From NCBI GenBank assembly GCA_002269645.1, contig NIVC01000298.1, positions 1-64,000 of the forward strand: 64,000 bases of DNA, read 5' to 3'. Of the stretch, positions 20,101-55,109 are shown one piece after another. The DNA is from Macrostomum lignano. Taxonomy: Eukaryota. The notes below the pieces were generated by a model that was not told the origin of the DNA, searched no databases, and saw only the letters and a list, made by a program, of their open reading frames with translations. Within the stretch, counting starts at the first letter, position 1; every line of letters starts with the position of its first letter. Made by a program: the position numbers and the translations under genes.

Positions 20101-20720
20101 CCTTTCGCGAGCTTGCTTTCAGTATTGTTTCAAAAAACCATCCCGTCAAAATTAACTGAAATTCAAAATCAAAATTCAAAATCAAACAAAGCGTTTTTAT
20201 AATAAGGTTTTTTATAAGTACTCGTAGCTAGTCAGCCAGTTTATGCAATATTTGCAACAAGGCAATGTTCTTCTCATAAATTATGCCTTTTTAAAATGTT
20301 TTATAAATATTGAAAATTTGAGCAAACGTATCATGACACGACGATATACGCAGCTCACCACACGGACGCGGCTGATTACACTCAGCTGCCCGCCTCGCCA
20401 ATGTTCTCCTCTTCTGTCGGCCGAACGCCTGAAGGCGCCGCCGCTGTCACTGCCGCTATCGCGTCTGTCGATCAGCGACTGGGCAGGGCGGCACCTGGCT
20501 CCGCGTCCAGGCGTCAGCTGTCTGACTTGTCCTCGGCTAGATCGGGTAACACGGAGCTCGGTTGGGACAGACAGACTGACAGAGACAGAGAGACAGACAG
20601 ACACAAAGACAGACAGACAGACACAAAGACAGACAGACAGACAGACAGACAGACACACAGACAGACAGACACACAGACAGACACTAAGACAGACAGACAC
20701 TAAGACAGACACTAAGACAC

Positions 20721-20775
<55 letters not shown>

Positions 20776-20870
20776 CACACAGACAGACAGAAAGACAGAC
20801 ACTAAGACACACAGACAGACAGACAGACAGACACTAAGACAGACAGACACTAAGACAGACACTAAGACAC

Positions 20871-20929
<59 letters not shown>

Positions 20930-20932
20930 CTA

Positions 20933-20965
<33 letters not shown>

Positions 20966-23679: not shown

Positions 23680-23718
<39 letters not shown>

Positions 23719-23843
23719 GTGTCTTTGTGTCTGTCTGTCTGTCTGTCTGTCTTTGTGTCTGTCTGTCTGTCTGTCTGTCTTTGTGTCTGTCTGTCTGTCT
23801 GTCTGTCTTTGTGTCTGTCTGTCTGTCTGTCTGTCTGTCTTTG

Positions 23844-23878
<35 letters not shown>

Positions 23879-26800
23879 GTGTCTTTGTGTCTGTCTGTCT
23901 GTCTGTCTGCCTGCCTTAGTGTCTGTCTGTGTCTGTCTGTCTGTCTTAAGTTTTATTTACAGCTACCATTTTATTTTATCCGTCTACTTGATGTAAGTAT
24001 GAATTGTTGATAGCTATTTTTGTACTTCTACAATATTTTAATCAAGCGGAATGAATTGTTAACTTGGAGAAAAAATATGGATTGTCATTGAGTTGGGGGC
24101 TGTGACAGAGGTGCCAATCTGGCGCATGTTTTTAATATTTTTTCTGGCTATGTTGTGCGTTTAGTCCGACTTAAATTGGCACCATGTCTTCCTGTGTTGC
24201 AGGACAACGTTGCCATGGAGCAGATCGAGCCCAGCTCCTACATGAGCCAGTACCGAGAGCCGGAGGCGCTCACACCGCCAGAGAACTACATCACTGGCAA
24301 GGACAATGTGGCACCTCAAAGGATTCCGGTTGTGTCCGGGTTAGTATATTATACACTATATTAGTAGGGAACTAAAAACTGAAAATATAGTGCAACTTGG
24401 TTCAGGCGTTTTATCGACGCTAAAGTCATCATTGAAGCGCTTAATTAGCGCTGACAAATCTTGATTGAGGCGCTTAATTGGCGCTAAAATCTTGATTGAG
24501 GCGCTTAATTGGCGCTAAAGTCTTGATTGAGGCGCTTAATTGGCGCTAAAGTCTTGATTGAGGCGCTTAATTGGCGCTAAAGTCTTGATTGAGGCGCCTA
24601 ATTGGCGCTAAAATGTTATTTTGAGGCGCTTAATTGGCGCTGAAATAATTATTGAGGCGCTAAATTGGCACTAAAATCCTGATTGAGGCGCTAAAATCCT
24701 GCTTGAAGCGCTAAAACTCTGATCGAGGCGCTTAATTGATGCTAAAATCCTGATTGAGGCGCTAAAATCCTGCTTGAAGCGCTAAAACTCTGATCGAGGC
24801 GCTTAATTGATGCTAAAATCCTGATTGAGGCGCTAAAATCCTGCTTGAAGCGCTAAAACTCTGATCGAGGCGCTTAATTGATGCTAAAATCCTGATTGAG
24901 GCGCTAAAATCCTGCTTGAAGCGCTAAAACTCTGATCGAGGCGCTTAATTGATGCTAAAATCCTGATTGAGGCGCTAAAATCCTGCTTGAAGCGCTAAAA
25001 CTCTGATCGAGGCGCTTAATTGATGCTAAAATCCTGATTGAGGCGCTAAAATCCTGCTTGAAGCGCTAAAACTCTGATCGAGGCGCTTAATTGATGCTAA
25101 AACCTTGATTGACTCGCTTTTGTGCTGCCCTACAAGCCTAGACTAAGTTTTTATATGTTATTATTTTACTAAAATATGAATTTATTTTATATCTCATTCG
25201 CTAATTGGCCATATTGACGTATTGACAGCTAAATCAACAGGGTTTATAAGAGTAATAACTGGTTGGTCTGCACTTCTTGGCTCGATTTGGCTCTCGAGAA
25301 GAATTTTCCTCTCTCTATCGGCCTCTTCCTACTGCCTTTCCTTCTGTACTGTTTTTCCGCTTCAAAGTCTTCTGCTTTTTTCTGGCTAAGCTATATAGCT
25401 TTTGGCAGTGTATTTTAGTACTGCTTATTGAAGTGTTTGGTTTCTCTTCTTCTGCTACGCTTCTCTTGTTTCAGTTTTTTTTCGTGTGCTTATGCGCTCG
25501 GGTGTGCAAGTAATGGTGCGGAGTTGAGGTTGCCCCCTCTTGTCTCTTGTTCTCATTGCATTCTGTCTGCATGTGCGCGCACAGGCCACGCGCTACAAAA
25601 TGCTATTCAGGCAACAGACAGGGCGCTCTCGACTTAGTAAATCTAGACTAGATCTTGTAGTTTCTAGTTTGTAGATTGTTTTTTACATGTAGATAATTGA
25701 ATTATTAGAATTACGAAATGAGAAAAAGGTAGCCAAGCTCAACTAATCTTATCAGCTGAAGTCTTCACACCTCTTGTGGCGTGACATCCACCGGTCAAGG
25801 GGCGTCAAGAGGCAGGGGCGCCAAACCAAAGAGACAGGAGGCGCTCATCAAGAGACAGGGGCGTCAATGAAACCATAAGGGCGCCAACCAAGAGACAGGG
25901 GCGCCAACCCAAGGAGACAGGAGGCGCCCATCAAGAGACAAGGGGGCGCCAACCAAGAGACAGGGGCGCCAACCAAAGAGACAAGGGGGCGCCAACCAAC
26001 AGACAGGGGCGCCAACCAAAGAGACAAGGGGGCGCCAACCAAGAGACAGGGGCGCTACGCTAACCAAGTGACAGGGGCGCCAACCAAAGAGAAAAAGGGG
26101 GCGCCAACCAAGAGACACCGGGCACCAACCAAGAGACAGGGGCGCCAACCCACCATGACCCCTAAATATTATTTATTAAGAAGCGTATTAATGGGAGTTT
26201 AGGACTGCAGTCAGCAGACTCGGTATTAATTCTTTGAAAAATCCCACAAAGGGTGTGGCTTCTTAGTCCCAGGCCAGACAGCCAGACACATGGATTGATT
26301 TCCATTGGCCTGGGCAAATATGCTACTGCCTACTGGGGGAATGGGGGATAATAGAGAGACAGGCCTCCGCGGTTACTGTACACAATGTACACTTAGAAAT
26401 AATTGCGCTGTATCTTTACTATAGAGAAGCTTTGGACTTTGCCTGTACGTGAATGGTCTGCCCCCCCCCCTCCGCATGCGGGCAGGACAGAGTTCTTGTA
26501 CTCTGTGGGAACCACCAACTGGGAGAGAACGAGTTGTGAGAGAGAAGACAGGAAAAATAAAGCTTTAGAAAGACCAATGCGCGCGCGCGTCACTCGCTCA
26601 CTCGGTTGTTTAGTGTTGAAAATAGGGACTGGGACTGGAAAAAAAACGCGCGCACACAACTGGGGGGCTAAGAGACCCCCAACCAGAGCTAGGAATATTG
26701 ACAGCTTTTCTCTCTACGAACTATTTAGTCGCCTGCCCTTAGACTAGAAATTTACTGGGCATTCAGACAAAGAACTAAATAGTAATTTACAGCCTTGTGT

Positions 26801-29800
26801 AAAGCAACAATTGCAACAGCAAATTAATCTGTAGGCATGACTGTTGATAGTAAAGTTATCGATCCAGAGACTGGCAGGTAAGTTGTGTTTAATAAGATAT
26901 CTTACGTCTGTTGTTGTCCTGAAATATGCCTTTTTTAAACTCAAAATTGTCTGGCACCAAAACTGAGAGAATCGTCCACAATTCCCAAATGATCCTCAAC
27001 CATTGAGAATCGCCCACAATTCCCAAATGATCCTCAACCATTGAGAATCGCCCACAATTCCCAAATGATCCTCAACCATTGAGAATCGCCCACAATTCCC
27101 AAATGATCCTCAACATTGAGAATCGCCCACAATTCCCAAATGATCCTCAACCATTGAGAATCGCCCACAATTCCCAAATGATCCTCAACCATTGAGAATC
27201 GCCCACAATTCCCAAATGATCCTCAACCATTGAGAATCGCCCACAATTCCCAAATGATCCTCAACCATTGAGAATCGCCCACAATTCCCAAATGATCCTC
27301 AACCATTGAGAATCGCCCACAATTCCCAAATGATCCTCAACCATTGAGAATCGCCCACAATTCCCAAATGATCCTCAACCATTGAGAATCGCCCACAATT
27401 CCCAAATGATCCTCAACCATTGAGAATCGCCCACAATTCCCAAATGATCCTCAACATTGAGAATCGCCCACAATTCCCAAATGATCCTCAACCATTGAGA
27501 ATCGCCCACAATTCCCAAATGATCCTCAACCATTGAGAATCGCCCACAATTCCCAAATGATCCTCAACCATTGAGAATCGCCCACAATTCCCAAATGATC
27601 CTCAACCATTGAGAATCGCCCACAATTCCCAAATGATCCTCAACCATTGAGAATCGCCCACAATTCCCAAATGATCCTCAACCATTGAGAATCGCCCACA
27701 ATTCCCAAATGATCCTCAACCATTGAGAATCGCCCACAATTCCCAAATGATCCTCAACCATTGAGAATCGCCCACAATTCCCAAATGATCCTCAACCATT
27801 GAGAATCGCCCACAATTCCCAAATGATCCTCAACCATTGAGAATCGCCCACAATTCCCAAATGATCCTCAACCATTGAGAATCGCCCACAATTCCCAAAT
27901 GATCCTCAACCATTGAGAATCGCCCACAATTCCCAAATGATCCTCAACCATTGAGAATCGCCCACAATTCCCAAATGATCCTCAACCATTGAGAATCGCC
28001 CACAATTCCCAAATGATCCTCAACCATTGAGAATCGCCCACAATTCCCAAATGATCCTCAACCATTGAGAATCGCCCACAATTCCCAAATGATCCTCAAC
28101 CATTGAGAATCGCCCACAATTCCCAAATGATCCTCAACCATTGAGAATCGCCCACAATTCCCAAATGATCCTCAACCATTGAGAATCGCCCACAATTCCC
28201 AAATGATCCTCAACCATTGAGAATCGCCCACAATTCCCAAATGATCCTCAACCATTGAGAATCGCCCACAATTCCCAAATGATCCTCAACCATTGAGAAT
28301 CGCCCACAATTCCCAAATGATCCTCAACCATTGAGAATCGCCCACAATTCCCAAATGATCCTCAACCATTGAGAATCGCCCACAATTCCCAAATGATCCT
28401 CAACCATTGAGAATCGCCCACAATTCCCAAATGATCCTCAACCATTGAGAATCGCCCACAATTCCCAAATGATCCTCAACCATTGAGAATCGCCCACAAT
28501 TCCCAAATGATCCTCAACCATTGAGAATCGCCCACAATTCCCAAATGATCCTCAACCATTGAGAATCGCCCACAATTCCCAAATGATCCTCAACCATTGA
28601 GAATCGCCCACAATTCCCAAATGATCCTCAACCATTGAGAATCGCCCACAATTCCCAAATGATCCTCAACCATTGAGAATCGCCCACAATTCCCAAATGA
28701 TCCTCAACCATTGAGAATCGCCCACAATTCCCAAATGATCCTCAACCATTGAGAATCGCCCACAATTCCCAAATGATCCTCAACCATTGAGAATCGCCCA
28801 CAATTCCCAAATGATCCTCAACCATTGAGAATCGCCCACAATTCCCAAATGATCCTCAACCATTGAGAATCGCCCACAATTCCCAAATGATCCTCAACCA
28901 TTGAGAATCGCCCACAATTCCCAAATGATCCTCAACCATTGAGAATCGCCCACAATTCCCAAATGATCCTCAACCATTGAGAATCGCCCACAATTCCCAA
29001 ATGATCCTCAACCATTGAGAATCGCCCACAATTCCCAAATGATCCTCAACCATTGAGAATCGCCCACAATTCCCAAATGATCCTCAACCATTGAGAATCG
29101 CCCACAATTCCCAAATGATCCTCAACCATTGAGAATCGCCCACAATTCCCAAATGATCCTCAACCATTGAGAATCGCCCACAATTCCCAAATGATCCTCA
29201 ACCATTGAGAATCGCCCACAATTCCCAAATGATCCTCAACCATTGAGAATCGCCCACAATTCCCAAATGATCCTCAACCATTGAGAATCGCCCACAATTC
29301 CCAAATGATCCTCAACCATTGAGAATCGCCCACAATTCCCAAATGATCCTCAACCATTGAGAATCGCCCACAATTCCCAAATGATCCTCAACCATTGAGA
29401 ATCGCCCACAATTCCCAAATGATCCTCAACCATTGAGAATCGCCCACAATTCCCAAATGATCCTCAACCATTGAGAATCGCCCACAATTCCCAAATGATC
29501 CTCAACCATTGAGAATCGCCCACAATTCCCAAATGATCCTCAACCATTGAGAATCGCCCACAATTCCCAAATGATCCTCAACCATTGAGAATCGCCCACA
29601 ATTCCCAAATGATCCTCAACCATTGAGAATCGCCCACAATTCCCAAATGATCCTCAACCATTGAGAATCGCCCACAATTCCCAAATGATCCTCAACCATT
29701 GAGAATCGCCCACAATTCCCAAATGATCCTCAACCATTGAGAATCGCCCACAATTCCCAAATGATCCTCAACCATTGAGAATCGCCCACAATTCCCAAAT

Positions 29801-32800
29801 GATCCTCAACCATTGAGAATCGCCCACAATTCCCAAATGATCCTCAACCATTGAGAATCGCCCACAATTCCCAAATGATCCTCAACCATTGAGAATCGCC
29901 CACAATTCCCAAATGATCCTCAACCATTGAGAATCGCCCACAATTCCCAAATGATCCTCAACCATTGAGAATCGCCCACAATTCCCAAATGATCCTCAAC
30001 CATTGAGAATCGCCCACAATTCCCAAATGATCCTCAACCATTGAGAATCGCCCACAATTCCCAAATGATCCTCAACCATTGAGAATCGCCCACAATTCCC
30101 AAATGATCCTCAACCATTGAGAATCGCCCACAATTCCCAAATGATCCTCAACCATTGAGAATCGCCCACAATTCCCAAATGATCCTCAACCATTGAGAAT
30201 CGCCCACAATTCCCAAATGATCCTCAACCATTGAGAATCGCCCACAATTCCCAAATGATCCTCAACCATTGAGAATCGCCCACAATTCCCAAATGATCCT
30301 CAACCATTGAGAATCGCCCACAATTCCCAAATGATCCTCAACCATTGAGAATCGCCCACAATTCCCAAATGATCCTCAACCATTGAGAATCGCCCACAAT
30401 TCCCAAATGATCCTCAACCATTGAGAATCGCCCACAATTCCCAAATGATCCTCAACCATTGAGAATCGCCCACAATTCCCAAATGATCCTCAACCATTGA
30501 GAATCGCCCACAATTCCCAAATGATCCTCAACCATTGAGAATCGCCCACAATTCCCAAATGATCCTCAACCATTGAGAATCGCCCACAATTCCCAAATGA
30601 TCCTCAACCATTGAGAATCGCCCACAATTCCCAAATGATCCTCAACCATTGAGAATCGCCCACAATTCCCAAATGATCCTCAACCATTGAGAATCGCCCA
30701 CAATTCCCAAATGATCCTCAACCATTGAGAATCGCCCACAATTCCCAAATGATCCTCAACCATTGAGAATCGCCCACAATTCCCAAATGATCCTCAACCA
30801 TTGAGAATCGCCCACAATTCCCAAATGATCCTCAACCATTGAGAATCGCCCACAATTCCCAAATGATCCTCAACCATTGAGAATCGCCCACAATTCCCAA
30901 ATGATCCTCAACCATTGAGAATCGCCCACAATTCCCAAATGATCCTCAACCATTGAGAATCGCCCACAATTCCCAAATGATCCTCAACCATTGAGAATCG
31001 CCCACAATTCCCAAATGATCCTCAACCATTGAGAATCGCCCACAATTCCCAAATGATCCTCAACCATTGAGAATCGCCCACAATTCCCAAATGATCCTCA
31101 ACCATTGAGAATCGCCCACAATTCCCAAATGATCCTCAACCATTGAGAATCGCCCACAATTCCCAAATGATCCTCAACCATTGAGAATCGCCCACAATTC
31201 CCAAATGATCCTCAACCATTGAGAATCGCCCACAATTCCCAAATGATCCTCAACCATTGAGAATCGCCCACAATTCCCAAATGATCCTCAACCATTGAGA
31301 ATCGCCCACAATTCCCAAATGATCCTCAACCATTGAGAATCGCCCACAATTCCCAAATGATCCTCAACCATTGAGAATCGCCCACAATTCCCAAATGATC
31401 CTCAACCATTGAGAATCGCCCACAATTCCCAAATGATCCTCAACCATTGAGAATCGCCCACAATTCCCAAATGATCCTCAACCATTGAGAATCGCCCACA
31501 ATTCCCAAATGATCCTCAACCATTGAGAATCGCCCACAATTCCCAAATGATCCTCAACCATTGAGAATCGCCCACAATTCCCAAATGATCCTCAACCATT
31601 GAGAATCGCCCACAATTCCCAAATGATCCTCAACCATTGAGAATCGCCCACAATTCCCAAATGATCCTCAACCATTGAGAATCGCCCACAATTCCCAAAT
31701 GATCCTCAACCATTGAGAATCGCCCACAATTCCCAAATGATCCTCAACCATTGAGAATCGCCCACAATTCCCAAATGATCCTCAACCATTGAGAATCGCC
31801 CACAATTCCCAAATGATCCTCAACCATTGAGAATCGCCCACAATTCCCAAATGATCCTCAACCATTGAGAATCGCCCACAATTCCCAAATGATCCTCAAC
31901 CATTGAGAATCGCCCACAATTCCCAAATGATCCTCAACCATTGAGAATCGCCCACAATTCCCAAATGATCCTCAACCATTGAGAATCGCCCACAATTCCC
32001 AAATGATCCTCAACCATTGAGAATCGCCCACAATTCCCAAATGATCCTCAACCATTGAGAATCGCCCACAATTCCCAAATGATCCTCAACCATTGAGAAT
32101 CGCCCACAATTCCCAAATGATCCTCAACCATTGAGAATCGCCCACAATTCCCAAATGATCCTCAACCATTGAGAATCGCCCACAATTCCCAAATGATCCT
32201 CAACCATTGAGAATCGCCCACAATTCCCAAATGATCCTCAACCATTGAGAATCGCCCACAATTCCCAAATGATCCTCAACCATTGAGAATCGCCCACAAT
32301 TCCCAAATGATCCTCAACCATTGAGAATCGCCCACAATTCCCAAATGATCCTCAACCATTGAGAATCGCCCACAATTCCCAAATGATCCTCAACCATTGA
32401 GAATCGCCCACAATTCCCAAATGATCCTCAACCATTGAGAATCGCCCACAATTCCCAAATGATCCTCAACCATTGAGAATCGCCCACAATTCCCAAATGA
32501 TCCTCAACCATTGAGAATCGCCCACAATTCCCAAATGATCCTCAACCATTGAGAATCGCCCACAATTCCCAAATGATCCTCAACCATTGAGAATCGCCCA
32601 CAATTCCCAAATGATCCTCAACCATTGAGAATCGCCCACAATTCCCAAATGATCCTCAACCATTGAGAATCGCCCACAATTCCCAAATGATCCTCAACCA
32701 TTGAGAATCGCCCACAATTCCCAAATGATCCTCAACCATTGAGAATCGCCCACAATTCCCAAATGATCCTCAACCATTGAGAATCGCCCACAATTCCCAA

Positions 32801-35800
32801 ATGATCCTCAACCATTGAGAATCGCCCACAATTCCCAAATGATCCTCAACCATTGAGAATCGCCCACAATTCCCAAATGATCCTCAACCATTGAGAATCG
32901 CCCACAATTCCCAAATGATCCTCAACCATTGAGAATCGCCCACAATTCCCAAATGATCCTCAACCATTGAGAATCGCCCACAATTCCCAAATGATCCTCA
33001 ACCATTGAGAATCGCCCACAATTCCCAAATGATCCTCAACCATTGAGAATCGCCCACAATTCCCAAATGATCCTCAACCATTGAGAATCGCCCACAATTC
33101 CCAAATGATCCTCAACCATTGAGAATCGCCCACAATTCCCAAATGATCCTCAACCATTGAGAATCGCCCACAATTCCCAAATGATCCTCAACCATTGAGA
33201 ATCGCCCACAATTCCCAAATGATCCTCAACCATTGAGAATCGCCCACAATTCCCAAATGATCCTCAACCATTGAGAATCGCCCACAATTCCCAAATGATC
33301 CTCAACCATTGAGAATCGCCCACAATTCCCAAATGATCCTCAACCATTGAGAATCGCCCACAATTCCCAAATGATCCTCAACCATTGAGAATCGCCCACA
33401 ATTCCCAAATGATCCTCAACCATTGAGAATCGCCCACAATTCCCAAATGATCCTCAACCATTGAGAATCGCCCACAATTCCCAAATGATCCTCAACCATT
33501 GAGAATCGCCCACAATTCCCAAATGATCCTCAACCATTGAGAATCGCCCACAATTCCCAAATGATCCTCAACCATTGAGAATCGCCCACAATTCCCAAAT
33601 GATCCTCAACCATTGAGAATCGCCCACAATTCCCAAATGATCCTCAACCATTGAGAATCGCCCACAATTCCCAAATGATCCTCAACCATTGAGAATCGCC
33701 CACAATTCCCAAATGATCCTCAACCATTGAGAATCGCCCACAATTCCCAAATGATCCTCAACCATTGAGAATCGCCCACAATTCCCAAATGATCCTCAAC
33801 CATTGAGAATCGCCCACAATTCCCAAATGATCCTCAACCATTGAGAATCGCCCACAATTCCCAAATGATCCTCAACCATTGAGAATCGCCCACAATTCCC
33901 AAATGATCCTCAACCATTGAGAATCGCCCACAATTCCCAAATGATCCTCAACCATTGAGAATCGCCCACAATTCCCAAATGATCCTCAACCATTGAGAAT
34001 CGCCCACAATTCCCAAATGATCCTCAACCATTGAGAATCGCCCACAATTCCCAAATGATCCTCAACCATTGAGAATCGCCCACAATTCCCAAATGATCCT
34101 CAACCATTGAGAATCGCCCACAATTCCCAAATGATCCTCAACCATTGAGAATCGCCCACAATTCCCAAATGATCCTCAACCATTGAGAATCGCCCACAAT
34201 TCCCAAATGATCCTCAACCATTGAGAATCGCCCACAATTCCCAAATGATCCTCAACCATTGAGAATCGCCCACAATTCCCAAATGATCCTCAACCATTGA
34301 GAATCGCCCACAATTCCCAAATGATCCTCAACCATTGAGAATCGCCCACAATTCCCAAATGATCCTCAACCATTGAGAATCGCCCACAATTCCCAAATGA
34401 TCCTCAACCATTGAGAATCGCCCACAATTCCCAAATGATCCTCAACCATTGAGAATCGCCCACAATTCCCAAATGATCCTCAACCATTGAGAATCGCCCA
34501 CAATTCCCAAATGATCCTCAACCATTGAGAATCGCCCACAATTCCCAAATGATCCTCAACCATTGAGAATCGCCCACAATTCCCAAATGATCCTCAACCA
34601 TTGAGAATCGCCCACAATTCCCAAATGATCCTCAACCATTGAGAATCGCCCACAATTCCCAAATGATCCTCAACCATTGAGAATCGCCCACAATTCCCAA
34701 ATGATCCTCAACCATTGAGAATCGCCCACAATTCCCAAATGATCCTCAACCATTGAGAATCGCCCACAATTCCCAAATGATCCTCAACCATTGAGAATCG
34801 CCCACAATTCCCAAATGATCCTCAACCATTGAGAATCGCCCACAATTCCCAAATGATCCTCAACCATTGAGAATCGCCCACAATTCCCAAATGATCCTCA
34901 ACCATTGAGAATCGCCCACAATTCCCAAATGATCCTCAACCATTGAGAATCGCCCACAATTCCCAAATGATCCTCAACCATTGAGAATCGCCCACAATTC
35001 CCAAATGATCCTCAACCATTGAGAATCGCCCACAATTCCCAAATGATCCTCAACCATTGAGAATCGCCCACAATTCCCAAATGATCCTCAACCATTGAGA
35101 ATCGCCCACAATTCCCAAATGATCCTCAACCATTGAGAATCGCCCACAATTCCCAAATGATCCTCAACCATTGAGAATCGCCCACAATTCCCAAATGATC
35201 CTCAACCATTGAGAATCGCCCACAATTCCCAAATGATCCTCAACCATTGAGAATCGCCCACAATTCCCAAATGATCCTCAACCATTGAGAATCGCCCACA
35301 ATTCCCAAATGATCCTCAACCATTGAGAATCGCCCACAATTCCCAAATGATCCTCAACCATTGAGAATCGCCCACAATTCCCAAATGATCCTCAACCATT
35401 GAGAATCGCCCACAATTCCCAAATGATCCTCAACCATTGAGAATCGCCCACAATTCCCAAATGATCCTCAACCATTGAGAATCGCCCACAATTCCCAAAT
35501 GATCCTCAACCATTGAGAATCGCCCACAATTCCCAAATGATCCTCAACCATTGAGAATCGCCCACAATTCCCAAATGATCCTCAACCATTGAGAATCGCC
35601 CACAATTCCCAAATGATCCTCAACCATTGAGAATCGCCCACAATTCCCAAATGATCCTCAACCATTGAGAATCGCCCACAATTCCCAAATGATCCTCAAC
35701 CATTGAGAATCGCCCACAATTCCCAAATGATCCTCAACCATTGAGAATCGCCCACAATTCCCAAATGATCCTCAACCATTGAGAATCGCCCACAATTCCC

Positions 35801-38800
35801 AAATGATCCTCAACCATTGAGAATCGCCCACAATTCCCAAATGATCCTCAACCATTGAGAATCGCCCACAATTCCCAAATGATCCTCAACCATTGAGAAT
35901 CGCCCACAATTCCCAAATGATCCTCAACCATTGAGAATCGCCCACAATTCCCAAATGATCCTCAACCATTGAGAATCGCCCACAATTCCCAAATGATCCT
36001 CAACCATTGAGAATCGCCCACAATTCCCAAATGATCCTCAACCATTGAGAATCGCCCACAATTCCCAAATGATCCTCAACCATTGAGAATCGCCCACAAT
36101 TCCCAAATGATCCTCAACCATTGAGAATCGCCCACAATTCCCAAATGATCCTCAACCATTGAGAATCGCCCACAATTCCCAAATGATCCTCAACCATTGA
36201 GAATCGCCCACAATTCCCAAATGATCCTCAACCATTGAGAATCGCCCACAATTCCCAAATGATCCTCAACCATTGAGAATCGCCCACAATTCCCAAATGA
36301 TCCTCAACCATTGAGAATCGCCCACAATTCCCAAATGATCCTCAACCATTGAGAATCGCCCACAATTCCCAAATGATCCTCAACCATTGAGAATCGCCCA
36401 CAATTCCCAAATGATCCTCAACCATTGAGAATCGCCCACAATTCCCAAATGATCCTCAACCATTGAGAATCGCCCACAATTCCCAAATGATCCTCAACCA
36501 TTGAGAATCGCCCACAATTCCCAAATGATCCTCAACCATTGAGAATCGCCCACAATTCCCAAATGATCCTCAACCATTGAGAATCGCCCACAATTCCCAA
36601 ATGATCCTCAACCATTGAGAATCGCCCACAATTCCCAAATGATCCTCAACCATTGAGAATCGCCCACAATTCCCAAATGATCCTCAACCATTGAGAATCG
36701 CCCACAATTCCCAAATGATCCTCAACCATTGAGAATCGCCCACAATTCCCAAATGATCCTCAACCATTGAGAATCGCCCACAATTCCCAAATGATCCTCA
36801 ACCATTGAGAATCGCCCACAATTCCCAAATGATCCTCAACCATTGAGAATCGCCCACAATTCCCAAATGATCCTCAACCATTGAGAATCGCCCACAATTC
36901 CCAAATGATCCTCAACCATTGAGAATCGCCCACAATTCCCAAATGATCCTCAACCATTGAGAATCGCCCACAATTCCCAAATGATCCTCAACCATTGAGA
37001 ATCGCCCACAATTCCCAAATGATCCTCAACCATTGAGAATCGCCCACAATTCCCAAATGATCCTCAACCATTGAGAATCGCCCACAATTCCCAAATGATC
37101 CTCAACCATTGAGAATCGCCCACAATTCCCAAATGATCCTCAACCATTGAGAATCGCCCACAATTCCCAAATGATCCTCAACCATTGAGAATCGCCCACA
37201 ATTCCCAAATGATCCTCAACCATTGAGAATCGCCCACAATTCCCAAATGATCCTCAACCATTGAGAATCGCCCACAATTCCCAAATGATCCTCAACCATT
37301 GAGAATCGCCCACAATTCCCAAATGATCCTCAACCATTGAGAATCGCCCACAATTCCCAAATGATCCTCAACCATTGAGAATCGCCCACAATTCCCAAAT
37401 GATCCTCAACCATTGAGAATCGCCCACAATTCCCAAATGATCCTCAACCATTGAGAATCGCCCACAATTCCCAAATGATCCTCAACCATTGAGAATCGCC
37501 CACAATTCCCAAATGATCCTCAACCATTGAGAATCGCCCACAATTCCCAAATGATCCTCAACCATTGAGAATCGCCCACAATTCCCAAATGATCCTCAAC
37601 CATTGAGAATCGCCCACAATTCCCAAATGATCCTCAACCATTGAGAATCGCCCACAATTCCCAAATGATCCTCAACCATTGAGAATCGCCCACAATTCCC
37701 AAATGATCCTCAACCATTGAGAATCGCCCACAATTCCCAAATGATCCTCAACCATTGAGAATCGCCCACAATTCCCAAATGATCCTCAACCATTGAGAAT
37801 CGCCCACAATTCCCAAATGATCCTCAACCATTGAGAATCGCCCACAATTCCCAAATGATCCTCAACCATTGAGAATCGCCCACAATTCCCAAATGATCCT
37901 CAACCATTGAGAATCGCCCACAATTCCCAAATGATCCTCAACCATTGAGAATCGCCCACAATTCCCAAATGATCCTCAACCATTGAGAATCGCCCACAAT
38001 TCCCAAATGATCCTCAACCATTGAGAATCGCCCACAATTCCCAAATGATCCTCAACCATTGAGAATCGCCCACAATTCCCAAATGATCCTCAACCATTGA
38101 GAATCGCCCACAATTCCCAAATGATCCTCAACCATTGAGAATCGCCCACAATTCCCAAATGATCCTCAACCATTGAGAATCGCCCACAATTCCCAAATGA
38201 TCCTCAACCATTGAGAATCGCCCACAATTCCCAAATGATCCTCAACCATTGAGAATCGCCCACAATTCCCAAATGATCCTCAACCATTGAGAATCGCCCA
38301 CAATTCCCAAATGATCCTCAACCATTGAGAATCGCCCACAATTCCCAAATGATCCTCAACCATTGAGAATCGCCCACAATTCCCAAATGATCCTCAACCA
38401 TTGAGAATCGCCCACAATTCCCAAATGATCCTCAACCATTGAGAATCGCCCACAATTCCCAAATGATCCTCAACCATTGAGAATCGCCCACAATTCCCAA
38501 ATGATCCTCAACCATTGAGAATCGCCCACAATTCCCAAATGATCCTCAACCATTGAGAATCGCCCACAATTCCCAAATGATCCTCAACCATTGAGAATCG
38601 CCCACAATTCCCAAATGATCCTCAACCATTGAGAATCGCCCACAATTCCCAAATGATCCTCAACCATTGAGAATCGCCCACAATTCCCAAATGATCCTCA
38701 ACCATTGAGAATCGCCCACAATTCCCAAATGATCCTCAACCATTGAGAATCGCCCACAATTCCCAAATGATCCTCAACCATTGAGAATCGCCCACAATTC

Positions 38801-41800
38801 CCAAATGATCCTCAACCATTGAGAATCGCCCACAATTCCCAAATGATCCTCAACCATTGAGAATCGCCCACAATTCCCAAATGATCCTCAACCATTGAGA
38901 ATCGCCCACAATTCCCAAATGATCCTCAACCATTGAGAATCGCCCACAATTCCCAAATGATCCTCAACCATTGAGAATCGCCCACAATTCCCAAATGATC
39001 CTCAACCATTGAGAATCGCCCACAATTCCCAAATGATCCTCAACCATTGAGAATCGCCCACAATTCCCAAATGATCCTCAACCATTGAGAATCGCCCACA
39101 ATTCCCAAATGATCCTCAACCATTGAGAATCGCCCACAATTCCCAAATGATCCTCAACCATTGAGAATCGCCCACAATTCCCAAATGATCCTCAACCATT
39201 GAGAATCGCCCACAATTCCCAAATGATCCTCAACCATTGAGAATCGCCCACAATTCCCAAATGATCCTCAACCATTGAGAATCGCCCACAATTCCCAAAT
39301 GATCCTCAACCATTGAGAATCGCCCACAATTCCCAAATGATCCTCAACCATTGAGAATCGCCCACAATTCCCAAATGATCCTCAACCATTGAGAATCGCC
39401 CACAATTCCCAAATGATCCTCAACCATTGAGAATCGCCCACAATTCCCAAATGATCCTCAACCATTGAGAATCGCCCACAATTCCCAAATGATCCTCAAC
39501 CATTGAGAATCGCCCACAATTCCCAAATGATCCTCAACCATTGAGAATCGCCCACAATTCCCAAATGATCCTCAACCATTGAGAATCGCCCACAATTCCC
39601 AAATGATCCTCAACCATTGAGAATCGCCCACAATTCCCAAATGATCCTCAACCATTGAGAATCGCCCACAATTCCCAAATGATCCTCAACCATTGAGAAT
39701 CGCCCACAATTCCCAAATGATCCTCAACCATTGAGAATCGCCCACAATTCCCAAATGATCCTCAACCATTGAGAATCGCCCACAATTCCCAAATGATCCT
39801 CAACCATTGAGAATCGCCCACAATTCCCAAATGATCCTCAACCATTGAGAATCGCCCACAATTCCCAAATGATCCTCAACCATTGAGAATCGCCCACAAT
39901 TCCCAAATGATCCTCAACCATTGAGAATCGCCCACAATTCCCAAATGATCCTCAACCATTGAGAATCGCCCACAATTCCCAAATGATCCTCAACCATTGA
40001 GAATCGCCCACAATTCCCAAATGATCCTCAACCATTGAGAATCGCCCACAATTCCCAAATGATCCTCAACCATTGAGAATCGCCCACAATTCCCAAATGA
40101 TCCTCAACCATTGAGAATCGCCCACAATTCCCAAATGATCCTCAACCATTGAGAATCGCCCACAATTCCCAAATGATCCTCAACCATTGAGAATCGCCCA
40201 CAATTCCCAAATGATCCTCAACCATTGAGAATCGCCCACAATTCCCAAATGATCCTCAACCATTGAGAATCGCCCACAATTCCCAAATGATCCTCAACCA
40301 TTGAGAATCGCCCACAATTCCCAAATGATCCTCAACCATTGAGAATCGCCCACAATTCCCAAATGATCCTCAACCATTGAGAATCGCCCACAATTCCCAA
40401 ATGATCCTCAACCATTGAGAATCGCCCACAATTCCCAAATGATCCTCAACCATTGAGAATCGCCCACAATTCCCAAATGATCCTCAACCATTGAGAATCG
40501 CCCACAATTCCCAAATGATCCTCAACCATTGAGAATCGCCCACAATTCCCAAATGATCCTCAACCATTGAGAATCGCCCACAATTCCCAAATGATCCTCA
40601 ACCATTGAGAATCGCCCACAATTCCCAAATGATCCTCAACCATTGAGAATCGCCCACAATTCCCAAATGATCCTCAACCATTGAGAATCGCCCACAATTC
40701 CCAAATGATCCTCAACCATTGAGAATCGCCCACAATTCCCAAATGATCCTCAACCATTGAGAATCGCCCACAATTCCCAAATGATCCTCAACCATTGAGA
40801 ATCGCCCACAATTCCCAAATGATCCTCAACCATTGAGAATCGCCCACAATTCCCAAATGATCCTCAACCATTGAGAATCGCCCACAATTCCCAAATGATC
40901 CTCAACCATTGAGAATCGCCCACAATTCCCAAATGATCCTCAACCATTGAGAATCGCCCACAATTCCCAAATGATCCTCAACCATTGAGAATCGCCCACA
41001 ATTCCCAAATGATCCTCAACCATTGAGAATCGCCCACAATTCCCAAATGATCCTCAACCATTGAGAATCGCCCACAATTCCCAAATGATCCTCAACCATT
41101 GAGAATCGCCCACAATTCCCAAATGATCCTCAACCATTGAGAATCGCCCACAATTCCCAAATGATCCTCAACCATTGAGAATCGCCCACAATTCCCAAAT
41201 GATCCTCAACCATTGAGAATCGCCCACAATTCCCAAATGATCCTCAACCATTGAGAATCGCCCACAATTCCCAAATGATCCTCAACCATTGAGAATCGCC
41301 CACAATTCCCAAATGATCCTCAACCATTGAGAATCGCCCACAATTCCCAAATGATCCTCAACCATTGAGAATCGCCCACAATTCCCAAATGATCCTCAAC
41401 CATTGAGAATCGCCCACAATTCCCAAATGATCCTCAACCATTGAGAATCGCCCACAATTCCCAAATGATCCTCAACCATTGAGAATCGCCCACAATTCCC
41501 AAATGATCCTCAACCATTGAGAATCGCCCACAATTCCCAAATGATCCTCAACCATTGAGAATCGCCCACAATTCCCAAATGATCCTCAACCATTGAGAAT
41601 CGCCCACAATTCCCAAATGATCCTCAACCATTGAGAATCGCCCACAATTCCCAAATGATCCTCAACCATTGAGAATCGCCCACAATTCCCAAATGATCCT
41701 CAACCATTGAGAATCGCCCACAATTCCCAAATGATCCTCAACCATTGAGAATCGCCCACAATTCCCAAATGATCCTCAACCATTGAGAATCGCCCACAAT

Positions 41801-44800
41801 TCCCAAATGATCCTCAACCATTGAGAATCGCCCACAATTCCCAAATGATCCTCAACCATTGAGAATCGCCCACAATTCCCAAATGATCCTCAACCATTGA
41901 GAATCGCCCACAATTCCCAAATGATCCTCAACCATTGAGAATCGCCCACAATTCCCAAATGATCCTCAACCATTGAGAATCGCCCACAATTCCCAAATGA
42001 TCCTCAACCATTGAGAATCGCCCACAATTCCCAAATGATCCTCAACCATTGAGAATCGCCCACAATTCCCAAATGATCCTCAACCATTGAGAATCGCCCA
42101 CAATTCCCAAATGATCCTCAACCATTGAGAATCGCCCACAATTCCCAAATGATCCTCAACCATTGAGAATCGCCCACAATTCCCAAATGATCCTCAACCA
42201 TTGAGAATCGCCCACAATTCCCAAATGATCCTCAACCATTGAGAATCGCCCACAATTCCCAAATGATCCTCAACCATTGAGAATCGCCCACAATTCCCAA
42301 ATGATCCTCAACCATTGAGAATCGCCCACAATTCCCAAATGATCCTCAACCATTGAGAATCGCCCACAATTCCCAAATGATCCTCAACCATTGAGAATCG
42401 CCCACAATTCCCAAATGATCCTCAACCATTGAGAATCGCCCACAATTCCCAAATGATCCTCAACCATTGAGAATCGCCCACAATTCCCAAATGATCCTCA
42501 ACCATTGAGAATCGCCCACAATTCCCAAATGATCCTCAACCATTGAGAATCGCCCACAATTCCCAAATGATCCTCAACCATTGAGAATCGCCCACAATTC
42601 CCAAATGATCCTCAACCATTGAGAATCGCCCACAATTCCCAAATGATCCTCAACCATTGAGAATCGCCCACAATTCCCAAATGATCCTCAACCATTGAGA
42701 ATCGCCCACAATTCCCAAATGATCCTCAACCATTGAGAATCGCCCACAATTCCCAAATGATCCTCAACCATTGAGAATCGCCCACAATTCCCAAATGATC
42801 CTCAACCATTGAGAATCGCCCACAATTCCCAAATGATCCTCAACCATTGAGAATCGCCCACAATTCCCAAATGATCCTCAACCATTGAGAATCGCCCACA
42901 ATTCCCAAATGATCCTCAACCATTGAGAATCGCCCACAATTCCCAAATGATCCTCAACCATTGAGAATCGCCCAAATTCCCAAATGATCCCCATTGAGAA
43001 TGCCCACATTCCAAATTCCTAACCATTGGAAGAATTCCCAAATTTATTCAACATTGGATGTATCATTCGGTGATTTTTTGTGTATGGTTATATTAAGTAG
43101 ATGCATAGCAACATTGGATGACATTCAAAAGTAGCTATTATTACCTGATTTCACTTGGTAGCTTTATTATTATTGTTACATTACATTTGTTAAAATCAGT
43201 TTCGTACATTGACCAGTAGTTTATATGGCTTGAAGCCTAATGTTTAATCTTGCTGCGCAATTCAATAAATTTATATACGAGTACATGTATATTATAGTAA
43301 AGCTTTTATGTTGCCAATGCTCCTGCAACTGCTGTGTGAATCCACTGACTGTCAGCTGCGTTGTCTGTGCATTTTCCTGGGTGTGCTTTCTCTCACCGAC
43401 TCCTCCTATCTCTCCGCTCCCTACCTCTCTTTACCCCCGCTGTCTACCTCTCTCTACCTCCTATCTACCTTTCTTCATCCCCTATCTAACTCTACCTATC
43501 TACCTCTCTTTAGCCCCTTATCTACGTCTCGTTACTCCCTATCTACTTCTCTTTAGCCCCGAACTACCTCTCTTCACCCCCTCTATCTACTTCTCGTTAC
43601 CCCTTATCTACCTCTCTTTACCTCTTATCTACCCCTTTTTACCCTCTATCTACCTCTGTTTAGCCCCTATCTACCTCTTTTTAGCCCCTATCTACCTCTT
43701 TTTAGCCCCTATCTACCTTTATTTACCCCTCTACCCCTCTTTACCCTCTATCTACCTCTCTTCGCCCACCCTATCTACCCCCCCTTTACCTCCCTCTAAC
43801 CCCTCTAAAACTCCATTTTCTCCACCTTTACTATCTATCTTCTTCCCTCTCTATCACCGATCATGTCTGTAATGAAAATCTCTCACTCGATTATAATTCA
43901 GTTACTTAACGCTTATCCGTAATAATTTATCCAAAACGTTTTGTGTTTGTTTCTCTTTAGCTTCCTGGTCTCCTTCCTGGTTGACGCTCGCGGCGGCGCC
44001 ATGAACGGCAGCCGGTTCCCCGGCCTGCGCATCGTGATCCCGCCCAATGCGGCCTCGGCCCCCACCCGCATCACTTGCCGGCTGATGCGCCAGGGCCGAG
44101 TCTCCCGACCGCCGCAGTTCAACGACGGCGAAGGCCTCGCCTGTCGCGTCATCGAGATGGGCCCTAGCAACGCTACTTTCAATAGCAACGTACTGATCGA
44201 GGTGCCGCATTTTGCTTCAATGCGCGATCGAGAACGCGAAATCGTTGTACTGCGTTCGGACAACGGCGAAACCTGGAAGGAGCACACCGTCGAAGTCACC
44301 GAACAGTCTGTTATCGACGCTGTCGGCGGCGCATTTGGCTCGATGCCAACTAACGACGATTTGCGCAAGAAACGAATCGTGCGAATTCTAACTAACAGCT
44401 TTCCGCAGTATTTTGCCCTGGTTACTAGGATTCGGCAGGAGAGCGCTCTGATTGGTCCGGAGGGTGGCGTCATCTCGTCTACTGTGATTGGACAGGTGGG
44501 GTTTCATCTCCAAATTAGCTTTAGCGTGCTTTTTTTAAAATACGTTTCCTGGAAATTGGTTGTCCTGTCTTACTACTTACAGTAGTTTTAATCTTAGTTA
44601 TAACACGGTGTACAGATTATAGTAATAATGGACATTTAGGCGATATCTAAAGATAGTAGGCATCTAAGTATTTAAAGGTTAGAGACAGTGAGCAACCATC
44701 TATAGACAATAAGCATGATCTACATGTAGAGATAATGGACATCTAGGCATCTAGATATAGTAGACATATGGGCATCTAGAGATGGTGGACATCTAGGCAT

Positions 44801-53800: not shown

Positions 53801-55109
53801 CAGCAAGAAGGCACCCAGGATGATGGTGAGAAAGACTTTATCAATAAAAGTAATCCTTATTAATTATGCAGCTATCACACAGAGTGTCGTCTGCTCATTA
53901 AATTATTAATTTTATAAAGCACATTTTATATTCCTCTTGCTATCTTAAAAGCACTAACTACTGAATTGTTTGTACTTTCTTAAAAATATTTTAATAAAAT
54001 TCTAAATTTCTGACTTTATTATAAATAGGCTTGTTTGCACATGCATGTTTTCAATTCAGTATGCGAGTGAATTTTGATTGATTGAGTGATTGATGGATGG
54101 ATGGATGATCAATATCGAGATGTAGATACTAGACAACTTCTGCAACAGCAACAACAACAACAAGATCAACATTTTGGACGGGCTGTCTATCAAGTACCTA
54201 TTGGCATCCGGTGCTTTTGCGTCTACTAATGATGTCCAGAAGGGTGAAGAGTCGGTCAGATCTGCTCTTCTATTAGGTAAGCTCTATATACATATTTTTA
54301 TAGAAATAGTTTGTGCGTTTTTTCAATAACTAATTTTATATGCTTGCATTCTTTCAGTAGTATATATCGACTTTTCAATACTACATTATATTATATTGTT
54401 TATTTCCTATGCTACTACTAGCAGTAAACAAAATGCGCACTACCTACTCGTATGATTCCCCCGGCCCTCGCTGGCCTTGGAATTTAAATAGATTTTCTCT
54501 GCTAGTAAAATAGTTCTAAAGGTAAAACTATTTTACTTTTGTATTGCCCTTCACAATTTACAGAATCGTAGCTTATGTGGCCAGCATCTGTCTGTGCCTC
54601 AGTTCCCTGACTGTGTCTGTGAGGCCTATATGTTTTATTAACTTGAATACCGCCAATTGTTTAGAATAACTACTTACAGTAGCTTAAATAACTGTTCAAT
54701 TATAAACAGACTTGCGCCAAGATGTGTTGGGCAATTTTTTAACCTATAAAAATCTGTTCGCACTTCTTCCCAATACTTTGTGGCGTCTCCTACTGCGCGT
54801 ACACATGCATGTGCGCAGATTTAGCATTGCCTGTTCTGTCTGATTAGCTATAGAAGCTGGCTTTTTGTGTGAATAGATTATGGACACAGGCAGACAGGCA
54901 GGCAGACAGACATACAGACAGACACTAAAGACAGACTGACAGACAGACATGCAAAAAGACAGACAGACAGACAGACATGCAGCAAGACAGACAGACAGAC
55001 AGACAGACATGCAGAAAGACAGACAGACAGACAGAAGGACATGCAGAAAGACGGACAGACAGACAGACACTAAAGACAGACTGACAGACAGACAGACAGA
55101 CATGCAGAA

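What the first reader, a model, noticed from the sequence alone, without database searches (positions are those of the whole stretch)
26967..43055. 16-kb, about 421-copy, almost invariant 38-bp satellite inside a conserved ankyrin intron
Seen: the array fills about 82% of the 19,621-nt phase-2 intron that splits the conserved SG|FLVSF junction. I saw only three variant units before the decayed 3' end. Known: satellite-filled giant introns occur in Drosophila Y-linked fertility genes, where they need dedicated transcription and splicing factors. Inference: a very recent expansion or strong homogenisation in a gene that must be transcribed through it. It might delay or gate production of spectrin-binding isoforms. 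Length and homogeneity could partly be assembly or polishing artefacts.
Basis: partly seen in the sequence, partly recalled or inferred. Interest (0 to 1): 0.7.

Follow-up and report, generated by a model that had tools for sequence, protein, structure and literature searches.

The report
Giant perfect minisatellite in ankyrin intron
A 16-kb run of about 423 head-to-tail copies of a 38-base unit, 408 of them letter-perfect, lies inside an evolutionarily conserved intron of an ankyrin gene whose other introns are also full of such repeats; it is most likely a very young, functionless repeat expansion whose exact length and perfection still need checking against raw reads, not a regulatory device.

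Summary
A 38-bp tandem array spans 26967-43028 (423 copies). A letter-perfect core runs 27455-42974 (15,520 bp, 408 units). There are three variant units at the 5' edge and about three decayed units at the 3' edge. The array fills 82% of a 19,621-nt phase-2 intron (24340-43960) that splits SG|FLVSF at the start of the ZU5N domain of a canonical ankyrin gene. The same intron position and phase occur in a beetle, a springtail, a trematode and a cestode.

The context changes the reading. Nine of ten mapped introns of this gene carry minisatellites, and three are 80-84% one array. 34% of the remaining window is minisatellite, against 0-12% at four orthologous loci. The 38-mer is also related to shorter arrays in other introns. 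Only the size (11 times the next array) and the perfection (408 versus at most 6 perfect units) are exceptional.

Best reading: a recent or ongoing expansion of one variant of a local minisatellite family, spliced out as a passenger. The closest analogue is the human CACNA1C intronic VNTR, not Drosophila megabase Y-introns. I found no evidence for isoform gating. Length and perfect identity are the properties most exposed to assembly or polishing artefact and could not be tested here.

The parts
26967..43028 (+). 38-bp minisatellite array, 423 copies, unit GAGAATCGCCCACAATTCCCAAATGATCCTCAACCATT (written on the sense strand of the host gene)
   Evidence: TRF. 421 matches at <=3 mismatches against 0 expected. 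No ORF >=60 aa overlaps it.
26967..27454 (+). 5' edge zone: 13 units, 3 of them variant (C->T in unit 1; the same 1-nt deletion in units 4 and 13, nine units apart)
   Evidence: 3/13 variant units here against 0/408 in the core, Fisher p=2.3e-5.
27455..42974 (+). Perfect core: 15,520 bp with exact 38-bp periodicity (408 identical units)
   Evidence: No other array in the window exceeds 6.1 perfect units (432 bp).
42965..43070 (+). Decayed 3' tail: about three units with increasing indels and substitutions
   Evidence: Global alignment of the tail to the unit; sequence shown.
24340..43960 (+). Host intron, 19,621 nt, phase 2, GT...AG. 89% tandem repeat in total; 3,559 nt without the giant array
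   Evidence: Position and phase conserved in four relatives.
24203..24339 (+). Upstream exon (linker, ...[13 protein letters not shown])
   Evidence: Aligns to human ankyrin-2 across the junction. Read-through into the intron hits a stop after 7 codons.
43961..44495 (+). Downstream exon: the whole ZU5N (spectrin-binding) domain in one exon
   Evidence: Pfam ZU5, PDB ankyrin-1/2/3, boundaries.
24396..25112 (+). Other arrays in the same intron: 31-bp and 71-bp units. The 71-bp array 24654-25112 is 98% identical and is the second most perfect array in the window
   Evidence: perfect run 432 bp.
25806..26150 (+). Another array in the same intron (21/43/65-bp periods)
43414..43795 (+). Another array in the same intron (21-bp unit, 75% matches)
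49548..50206 (+). Related minisatellites (30-, 38- and 22-bp units) in a downstream intron, same strand, homologous to the 38-mer
   Evidence: Cyclic alignment against 200 shuffles: score 42 for the 30-mer, z=9.6 for the 38-mer, z=4.5 for the 22-mer.
52104..53137 (+). Related 25-bp minisatellite, same strand
   Evidence: z=5.4.
53511..53750 (+). Weakly related 23-bp minisatellite, same strand
   Evidence: z=2.8, 4/200 shuffles as good.
8320..8724 (-). Related 29-bp minisatellite in an ANK-domain intron, opposite orientation
   Evidence: z=4.3, best on the reverse strand.

Best explanation
The feature is a non-coding intronic minisatellite (a VNTR-type array). One 38-bp variant of a locally recurring repeat family has undergone a very recent, or still ongoing, large expansion. 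An older short array, of the kind found in nearly every intron of this gene, supplied the seed; its remains are the decayed 3' tail and the variant 5' units. One internal unit was then amplified to about 400 copies. The likely route is replication slippage, unequal sister-chromatid exchange or break-induced replication within a perfect tract; this step is inferred. The array lies in a conserved phase-2 intron in front of the ZU5N exon. It is transcribed as part of the ankyrin pre-mRNA and removed by ordinary splicing (inferred). It is a passenger with at most a mild quantitative cost to expression, not a device. Shown here: the array, its perfection, the gene structure, the conserved intron, the relatedness to other arrays and the lineage-specific repeat load. 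Inferred: the timing, the mechanism of expansion and the neutrality.
For: The array and its perfect 15.5-kb core are in the sequence. The unit is homologous to shorter, more diverged arrays in other introns of the same gene. The unit occurs nowhere else in the window. Nine of ten mapped introns carry arrays covering 37-89% of their length, and three are 80-84% a single array. 34% of the window outside the giant array is minisatellite, against 0-12% at the orthologous loci of four relatives. So the giant array is the tail of a lineage-specific tendency. Variant units sit only at the edges, with a decayed tail, which fits an old seed with a young core. Zero substitutions in 15.5 kb bounds the age to roughly <2e4-2e5 generations for mutation rates of 1e-8 to 1e-9, absent homogenisation (the rates are assumed). 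The intron minus the array is 3.6 kb, comparable to the ~4.7 kb (beetle) and <=~2.9 kb (springtail) orthologous introns. The array is non-coding: no ORF >=60 aa, no Rfam family, no tRNA and no Pfam domain in the intron flanks. The flanking exons are collinear, phase-compatible and rebuild a motif that aligns without a gap to human ankyrin-2. The human CACNA1C VNTR is proposed to have expanded through perfect tracts that later decayed (PMC13131567), so such a stage should exist.
Against: 408 identical units is 15 times the longest perfect tract reported in human TRACT (26 units; PMC13131567). The other 24 arrays here reach at most 6 perfect units. Such perfection is what consensus polishing of multi-mapping reads produces. 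All variants lie within 456 bp of the 5' edge or about 100 bp of the 3' edge, which is roughly the reach of short-read pairs anchored in unique flank. The mechanism of expansion is not supported by any sequence property I could find: the per-unit DNA hairpin is weak (z=-1.1), and shorter arrays fold better. Neutrality is assumed, not tested. Only one window was available, so genome-wide copies are unknown.
Confidence: 0.6

Rival explanations
1. Assembly or polishing artefact. A real but shorter, longer or more variable array has been rendered as a 16-kb perfect block. Reads inside a near-identical array can be placed in any register, so the consensus converges on the majority unit. The length is then set by the few spanning reads or by the assembler's graph. 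This partly overlaps with the best explanation: an array is almost certainly there, but its length and 100% identity may be wrong.
For: The perfect run of 408 units compares with at most 6.1 units in 24 other arrays of the same window. Variants are confined to the first 456 bp and the last ~100 bp: 3/13 edge units against 0/408 interior, p=2.3e-5. At the edge rate, about 94 interior variants would be expected. Two of the three variants are a CC->C length change, a typical long-read error or residual type. The array length is close to a typical HiFi read length (general knowledge), which is the size at which perfect arrays tend to be truncated.
Against: There is no N or gap next to the array. 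The two flanks are the correct, collinear, phase-matched halves of one gene. The same assembly preserves 4-45% unit divergence, spread through all quarters, in arrays up to 1.45 kb. So an array with ordinary divergence would have assembled with its variants, and the real array must be at least about 99% homogeneous. Edge-only variation with a decayed tail is also the normal biological pattern, since homogenisation is more efficient within long arrays (PMC10048060).
Confidence: 0.3
2. Functional intron element. The array acts as a transcriptional delay or gate, an RNA-binding-protein sponge or a chromatin element that controls production of ZU5-containing (spectrin-binding) ankyrin isoforms.
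For: The array sits directly upstream of the ZU5N exon in an intron retained since the protostome ancestor, while two neighbouring ZU5N introns were lost in this lineage. The sense strand has no GT dinucleotide, so it offers no cryptic donors. The repeat RNA folds better than shuffles, z=-3.7. Long CACNA1C TRACT alleles are associated with lower expression in some tissues (PMC13131567).
Against: 16 kb adds only minutes of elongation, about 100 times less than the Drosophila case (PMC6508621). Absence of GT is expected 36% of the time from composition alone. No alternative exon, domain or RNA family lies in the intron. Orthologous introns in four relatives carry no such array, so the conserved feature is the intron, not the repeat. 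A perfect array implies it is too young to have a conserved role. Comparable arrays fill most other introns of the gene.
Confidence: 0.04
3. Local outpost of a dispersed repeat system. The 38-mer is carried or seeded by a mobile element (Helitron- or MITE-type tandem-repeat cargo), or it belongs to a genome-wide satellite family, and the intron merely received a copy that then grew.
For: Related units occur in at least four other places in the gene, one of them inverted, so some dispersal process exists. TE-borne tandem repeats are a documented source of dispersed arrays (PMC10048060).
Against: The array flanks share no sequence with anything else in the window. No terminal inverted repeats were found and no TE protein domains. 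The related arrays differ by many indels, so they are not recent copies. TE-borne arrays are usually up to 10 monomers, about 90 at most (PMC10048060). Neither the unit nor the family unit was found in the metagenome collection or in any searchable paper.
Confidence: 0.1

Closest known systems
Human CACNA1C intron-3 VNTR ('TRACT')
   Same: A minisatellite unit of similar size (30 bp against 38 bp). A kilobase-scale array (3-30+ kb against 16 kb) lying wholly inside an intron of a large membrane/cytoskeleton-related gene. A lineage-specific expansion. It is proposed to have grown through perfect repeat tracts (PMC13131567; also PMC11118589 and bioRxiv 10.1101/311795).
   Different: TRACT alleles are mosaics of many variant units, and the longest perfect tract reported is 26 units; here 408 units are identical. 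TRACT length polymorphism, haplotype history and expression association are measured; here none of these could be tested. The host genome here is saturated with minisatellites.
Satellite-containing gigantic introns of Drosophila Y-linked fertility genes (kl-3, kl-5, ks-1)
   Same: Tandem repeats inside introns that RNA polymerase II must transcribe through to make the mRNA (PMC6508621).
   Different: Those introns are megabases of 5-bp simple satellites making up >99% of the locus. They are Y-linked and spermatocyte-specific, transcribed over ~90 h, and depend on Blanks and Heph. This array is 16 kb, has a 38-bp unit and covers 30% of the gene span in the window, in a housekeeping-type cytoskeletal adaptor gene. 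The scale differs by about 100 times, so no special expression programme is implied.
Dispersed euchromatic satellite or TE-borne tandem arrays (e.g. oyster Helitron-associated repeats, Tribolium and Drosophila 1.688 euchromatic copies)
   Same: Tandem arrays in gene-rich DNA, with related units at several nearby sites. Longer arrays homogenise better than short dispersed ones (PMC10048060).
   Different: Those arrays are typically up to 6-10 monomers (up to ~90) and are often flanked by TE sequence. This one has 423 monomers and no TE hallmark in its flanks.

Membership tests
Intronic minisatellite / VNTR | Head-to-tail tandem array with a unit of about 10-100 bp | tested here: met
   Period 38, 423 copies. 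421 matches at <=3 mismatches against 0 expected.
Intronic minisatellite / VNTR | Lies wholly within an intron bounded by canonical splice sites of a protein-coding gene | tested here: met
   GT at 24340, AG at 43959-43960, phase 2. The exons rebuild ...SG|FLVSF..., aligned to human ankyrin-2. The same intron is present in four relatives.
Intronic minisatellite / VNTR | Non-coding: no reading frame or structured-RNA gene in the array | tested here: met
   No ORF >=60 aa overlaps the array. Rfam gave 0 hits and tRNA search gave 0.
Intronic minisatellite / VNTR | Copy number varies between individuals or haplotypes | not testable with these tools
   Only one assembled sequence is available. No independent copies turned up in the metagenome scans.
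Satellite-DNA gigantic intron (Drosophila Y-loop type) | Intron of hundreds of kilobases to megabases | tested here: not met
   The intron is 19,621 nt.
Satellite-DNA gigantic intron (Drosophila Y-loop type) | Simple satellite repeats make up nearly all (>99%) of the gene locus | tested here: not met
   The unit is 38 bp, and the array is 30% of the gene span in the window. Definition taken from PMC6508621.
Satellite-DNA gigantic intron (Drosophila Y-loop type) | Needs dedicated RNA-binding factors and a prolonged transcription programme | not testable with these tools
   No expression data. The expected extra elongation time is only about 4-16 min (general knowledge of Pol II rates).
Canonical ankyrin gene (host) | N-terminal ANK-repeat membrane-binding domain | tested here: met
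   Pfam Ank/Ank_2 in five exons between 5925 and 9930, E down to 9e-65.
Canonical ankyrin gene (host) | ZU5N-ZU5C-UPA supramodule followed by a death domain | tested here: met
   ZU5 E=1.6e-26. ZU5 plus UPA_2 at 45483-46001, and UPA_2 at 46467-46655. Death domain at 48819-49355, E=3.7e-6. PDB ankyrin-1/2/3 hits.
TE-borne tandem repeat (Helitron/MITE cargo) | Array flanked by element termini or inverted repeats, with flanks shared by other copies or with TE coding remnants | tested here: not met
   Within this window there are no shared flanks, no inverted repeats and no Pfam domains in intron ORFs. Genome-wide copies could not be examined.
Assembly artefact (mis-join or collapsed/over-polished array) | Gap, broken collinearity or incompatible flanks at the array | tested here: not met
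   No N in the window. The flanks are consecutive, same-strand, phase-matched exons of one gene.
Assembly artefact (mis-join or collapsed/over-polished array) | Read depth, spanning reads or interior variants disagree with the assembled array | not testable with these tools
   No reads were available. The edge-only distribution of variants is compatible with both artefact and biology.

The most novel reading that the evidence does not exclude
The 408-unit perfect tract is real, and the array is a minisatellite caught in the unstable 'burst' phase that the perfect-tract model of VNTR growth predicts but that has not been observed at this scale. On this reading it would be hypervariable in length between individuals, and perhaps somatically. 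It would measurably change ankyrin output, as long CACNA1C TRACT alleles lower expression. It would sit in a genome whose repeat-generating process has filled nearly every intron, giving a natural system for studying how kilobase VNTRs are born.
Probability: 0.15. Interest if true: 0.55.

Novelty: new member of a known kind. Interest (0 to 1): 0.3.

Why it matters
If the array is as assembled, it is an unusually clean example of a kilobase-scale intronic VNTR at the very start of its life, with 15.5 kb free of any mutation. It lies in an essential, conserved gene, next to older and decayed relatives in neighbouring introns. That would give a time series of minisatellite birth, growth and decay within one locus. 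It would also test the idea, drawn from the human CACNA1C repeat, that long perfect tracts drive expansion and that interruptions stabilise arrays. The wider observation may matter more than the single array: about a third of this gene's non-exonic DNA is minisatellite, against almost none in orthologous loci of other animals. That points to a lineage-specific process that builds introns out of tandem repeats. If the array is instead partly an artefact, it is a useful warning for annotating long-read assemblies of repeat-rich genomes.

Tried and rejected
(1) Hairpin-driven expansion. Each unit holds an imperfect palindrome (GATCCTCAA-CCA-TTGAGAATC), and the repeat RNA folds at z=-3.7. With DNA parameters, however, the hairpin is weak: -2.7 kcal/mol per unit, z=-1.1, and 30/200 shuffles fold as well. 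Much shorter arrays fold better: the 31-mer at 24396 (z=-4.1), the 25-mer at 52104 (z=-5.1) and the 34-mer at 21750 (z=-3.8). Rejected as an explanation of why this array grew.

(2) Selection against cryptic donors. The sense strand has no GT, but composition alone gives that 36% of the time. Not significant.

(3) An inverted partial unit at the 3' junction. Score 28 against a null of 24 +/- 4.9. Chance.

(4) Transposon origin. No shared flanks, no inverted repeats and no protein domains.

(5) A structured RNA or tRNA-derived element. Rfam gave 0 hits and tRNA search gave 0.

(6) Independent copies elsewhere. Two metagenome scans, one with the 38-mer core and one with the related 25-nt family unit, found nothing. 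The unit sequence is in no searchable paper.

(7) Identifying the organism. The best protein matches are only 64-68% identical (flatworm fragments and unnamed contigs), so no close relative is in the collection. Literature probes for minisatellite-filled introns did not point to a species. I ran no further search on this.

(8) Drosophila-type giant-intron membership. Two defining features were tested and not met.


Full report
THE OBSERVATION. Tandem Repeats Finder reports a single array at 26967-43028 with period 38, 423.0 copies, 99% matches and no indels. The consensus unit GAGAATCGCCCACAATTCCCAAATGATCCTCAACCATT matches 421 times at three or fewer mismatches, and none are expected by chance. 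Outside the array, only 10-12 nt chance-level matches exist in the window. Unit 1 carries a C->T change. Units 4 and 13 carry the same one-base deletion (CAACCATT to CAACATT), nine units apart. From 27455 to 42974 the sequence is perfectly periodic for 15,520 bp, which is 408 identical units. About three units then decay progressively up to roughly 43070. The window contains no N.

THE HOST GENE AND INTRON. The upstream exon (24203-24339) ends ...PQRIPVVSG with GG|GTTAGT. The downstream exon starts at 43961 after TTTAG with C TTC CTG GTC, giving [12 protein letters not shown]. The joined peptide hits Pfam ZU5 (E=1.6e-26). It also aligns to human ankyrin-2 (6m3q, E=4e-69) without a gap across SG|FLVSF. 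The rest of the window encodes a canonical ankyrin on the + strand:
- Five ANK-repeat exons between 5925 and 9930, with Pfam Ank_2 E-values down to 9e-65.
- The last ANK exon at 14529.
- ZU5N as a single exon, 43961-44495.
- ZU5C plus the start of UPA at 45483-46001, and UPA at 46467-46655.
- A death domain at about 47088-49355.
- C-terminal ORFs out to 58974.

Full-length protein therefore requires transcription through the array. Retaining the intron would give a stop after seven codons.

IS THE INTRON CONSERVED? I fetched the genomic loci of four relatives found by protein search: the beetle Henosepilachna, the springtail Orchesella, the trematode Schistosoma margrebowiei and the cestode Dibothriocephalus latus. 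In all four, the FLVSF codons are preceded by ...ag plus one base. That is an acceptor in phase 2 at the same residue. The beetle intron is about 4.7 kb and the springtail intron at most about 2.9 kb. Without the giant array, the intron here would be 3,559 nt, which is ordinary. Schistosoma, the cestode and the beetle each split ZU5N into three exons, whereas it is one exon here. So this lineage lost neighbouring introns but kept this one.

CONTEXT THAT CHANGES THE READING. The window is saturated with minisatellites. TRF lists more than 30 separate arrays with units of 18-93 bp. Nine of the ten introns I could map contain arrays, covering 37-89% of their length. Three introns (7075-7634, 8277-8785 and about 47406-48850) are each 80-84% a single array. 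So 'fills 82% of the intron' is the local norm. With the giant array removed, 34% of the window is still in arrays of period 10 or more. With identical settings, the orthologous ankyrin loci of the four relatives give 0-12%, and three of the four give 2% or less. The repeat load is a property of this lineage or locus.

The giant array is set apart by two things. First, its size: 16,062 bp against at most 1,451 bp. Second, its perfection: 408 perfect units against at most 6.1. In the other long arrays, variants are spread through every quarter of the array.

RELATIVES OF THE UNIT. I aligned the 38-mer cyclically to the consensus units of 24 other arrays and scored each against 200 shuffles. It is homologous to arrays in downstream introns on the same strand:
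- The 30-mer at 49548 (score 42).
- The 38-mer at 49584-49771 (z=9.6).
- The 22-mer at 49740-50206 (z=4.5).
- The 25-mer at 52104-53137 (z=5.4).
- Weakly, the 23-mer at 53511 (z=2.8).

On the opposite strand it is related to the 29-mer at 8320-8724 (z=4.3). The remaining 18 units are unrelated. The 38-mer differs from the 30-mer by several small insertions, so the relationship is old. The giant array is thus one variant of a recurring local family that has been amplified far beyond its relatives.

ORIGIN. The flanks of the array share nothing with the rest of the window. There are no terminal inverted repeats, and the intron's non-repeat ORFs have no Pfam domain. There is no Rfam or tRNA match. 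I therefore see no sign of a mobile element, although one window cannot exclude it. The decayed 3' tail and the variant 5' units look like the remains of an older short array from which one internal unit expanded. The nine-unit spacing of the two identical deletion variants suggests a block duplication by out-of-register exchange; this is inference. No substitution in 15.5 kb implies an age below roughly 2e4-2e5 generations for mutation rates of 1e-8 to 1e-9 per base per generation, unless homogenisation is continuous (the rates are assumed).

WHY THIS ARRAY? I tested one idea. Each unit contains an imperfect 9-bp palindrome, and four units of RNA fold better than all 200 shuffles (z=-3.7). 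With DNA parameters the hairpin is weak (z=-1.1), and several short arrays in the window fold far better. So hairpin-promoted slippage does not explain the outlier. The sense strand lacks GT, and so offers no cryptic donor, but composition alone gives this 36% of the time.

FUNCTION. Nothing supports gating of spectrin-binding isoforms. The array is non-coding. The intron holds no alternative exon with a recognisable domain. The relatives keep the intron without any such array. A perfect array is by definition too young to carry a conserved role. At ordinary polymerase speeds of 1-4 kb/min (general knowledge), 16 kb costs about 4-16 minutes. The Drosophila comparison fails on scale and kind. 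kl-3 and kl-5 introns hold megabases of 5-bp satellites, make up more than 99% of the locus, take most of a ~90-hour programme to express, and need Blanks and Heph (PMC6508621). Here the array is 30% of the gene span.

CLOSEST KNOWN. The best match is the human-specific 30-bp VNTR in CACNA1C intron 3 (TRACT). It is 3-30+ kb, intronic and lineage-specific, and it is proposed to have grown through perfect tracts that were later interrupted by mutation (PMC13131567; see also PMC11118589). Its longest reported perfect tract is 26 units. The present array, if real, would represent the earlier, uninterrupted stage, which that model predicts to be unstable. Long TRACT alleles are associated with lower expression in some tissues, so a mild quantitative effect is conceivable. 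Dispersed euchromatic satellites and TE-borne arrays (PMC10048060) resemble the family aspect, but those arrays are usually short.

THE OPEN PROBLEM. The two properties that make the array remarkable are its length and its perfect identity. These are the properties most exposed to assembly and polishing error. All variants lie within 456 bp of the 5' edge or about 100 bp of the 3' edge. That gives 3 of 13 edge units against 0 of 408 interior units (p=2.3e-5). Both explanations predict this pattern: natural edge decay, and consensus polishing in which only reads anchored in unique flank keep their variants.

Against a gross artefact there are three points. No gap adjoins the array. The flanks are the correct consecutive halves of one gene. 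The same assembly preserves abundant variants in arrays up to 1.45 kb, so the true array must be at least about 99% homogeneous and several kilobases long. I could not test more than that. Scans of the metagenome collection for the unit and for its family relative found nothing, and the sequence appears in no searchable paper.

VERDICT. The feature is a new member of a known kind, a kilobase-scale intronic minisatellite. It is notable as an extreme outlier in homogeneity within a genome region that is itself unusually rich in such repeats. It is probably a young passenger expansion (confidence 0.6). There is a substantial chance (0.3, partly overlapping with that explanation) that its assembled length or perfection is inexact. 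The chance that it has a dedicated regulatory role is small. Interest 0.3.

Noticed in passing
window 1-64000 (introns of the ankyrin gene, 5925-58974): Nearly every intron is built largely from its own minisatellite. Nine of ten mapped introns carry arrays covering 37-89% of their length, and three are 80-84% one array. 34% of the window outside the giant array is tandem repeat of period >=10, against 0-12% at the orthologous loci of a beetle, a springtail, a trematode and a cestode. This lineage-specific repeat load may be more interesting than the single array.
   Followed up: partly
window 49548-50206, 52104-53137, 53511-53750 (+) and 8320-8724 (-): A family of related minisatellite units (shared core CAATTCCC..ATGATCC..CAA..TGGAAT) occupies several different introns of the same gene, one of them in inverted orientation. 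The giant 38-mer belongs to this family. How the motif spread between introns is unexplained.
   Followed up: partly
window 24654-25112: A 71-bp-unit array of 6.5 copies, 98% identical (perfect run 432 bp), is the second most perfect array in the window. It lies in the same intron, 1.9 kb upstream of the giant array. That makes two very young arrays in one intron.
   Followed up: no
window 58554-58789 within ORF 58375-58974 (+): A 24-bp (8-codon) tandem repeat lies in frame in a candidate C-terminal exon. It encodes a Pro/Glu/Val/Gln-rich acidic repeat (…[30 protein letters not shown]…) that ends in [10 protein letters not shown]-stop. The only Pfam match is a sub-threshold low-complexity hit. 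This may be a coding VNTR in the ankyrin tail; whether it is an exon was not verified.
   Followed up: no
window 20566-21139 and 23624-23946; also 54886-55551 and 57936-57979: Long tetranucleotide microsatellites occur in opposite orientations within the same transcription unit: (GACA)n, then (TGTC)n 2.5 kb downstream, and (ACAG)n with a short (TGTC)n further on. As RNA these would be complementary over hundreds of bases and could pair to loop out the sequence between them. Not examined.
   Followed up: no
window 43961-44495, 7635-8276, 9184-9930 compared with L001, L002, L003: Intron loss in this lineage. ZU5N is one 535-bp exon here but three exons in Schistosoma, the cestode and the beetle. 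The ANK domain sits in exons of up to 642 and 747 bp. The phase-2 intron before FLVSF was nevertheless retained.
   Followed up: partly
window 1-64000: There is strong strand asymmetry. Most arrays are C-rich and G-poor on the sense strand of the gene (cumulative GC skew -5.6; the giant array has skew -0.53). A few G-rich exceptions occur at 12491-13120, 13511-14412 and 16052-16755. Whether this reflects transcription-coupled bias was not tested.
   Followed up: no
window 682-2132: A 21-bp array of 69 copies (90% matches) upstream of the first ANK exon in the window creates long stop-free frames, such as the 592-aa ORF 362-2140. These are almost certainly repeat artefacts rather than coding sequence, and could mislead automatic gene callers.
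   Followed up: no
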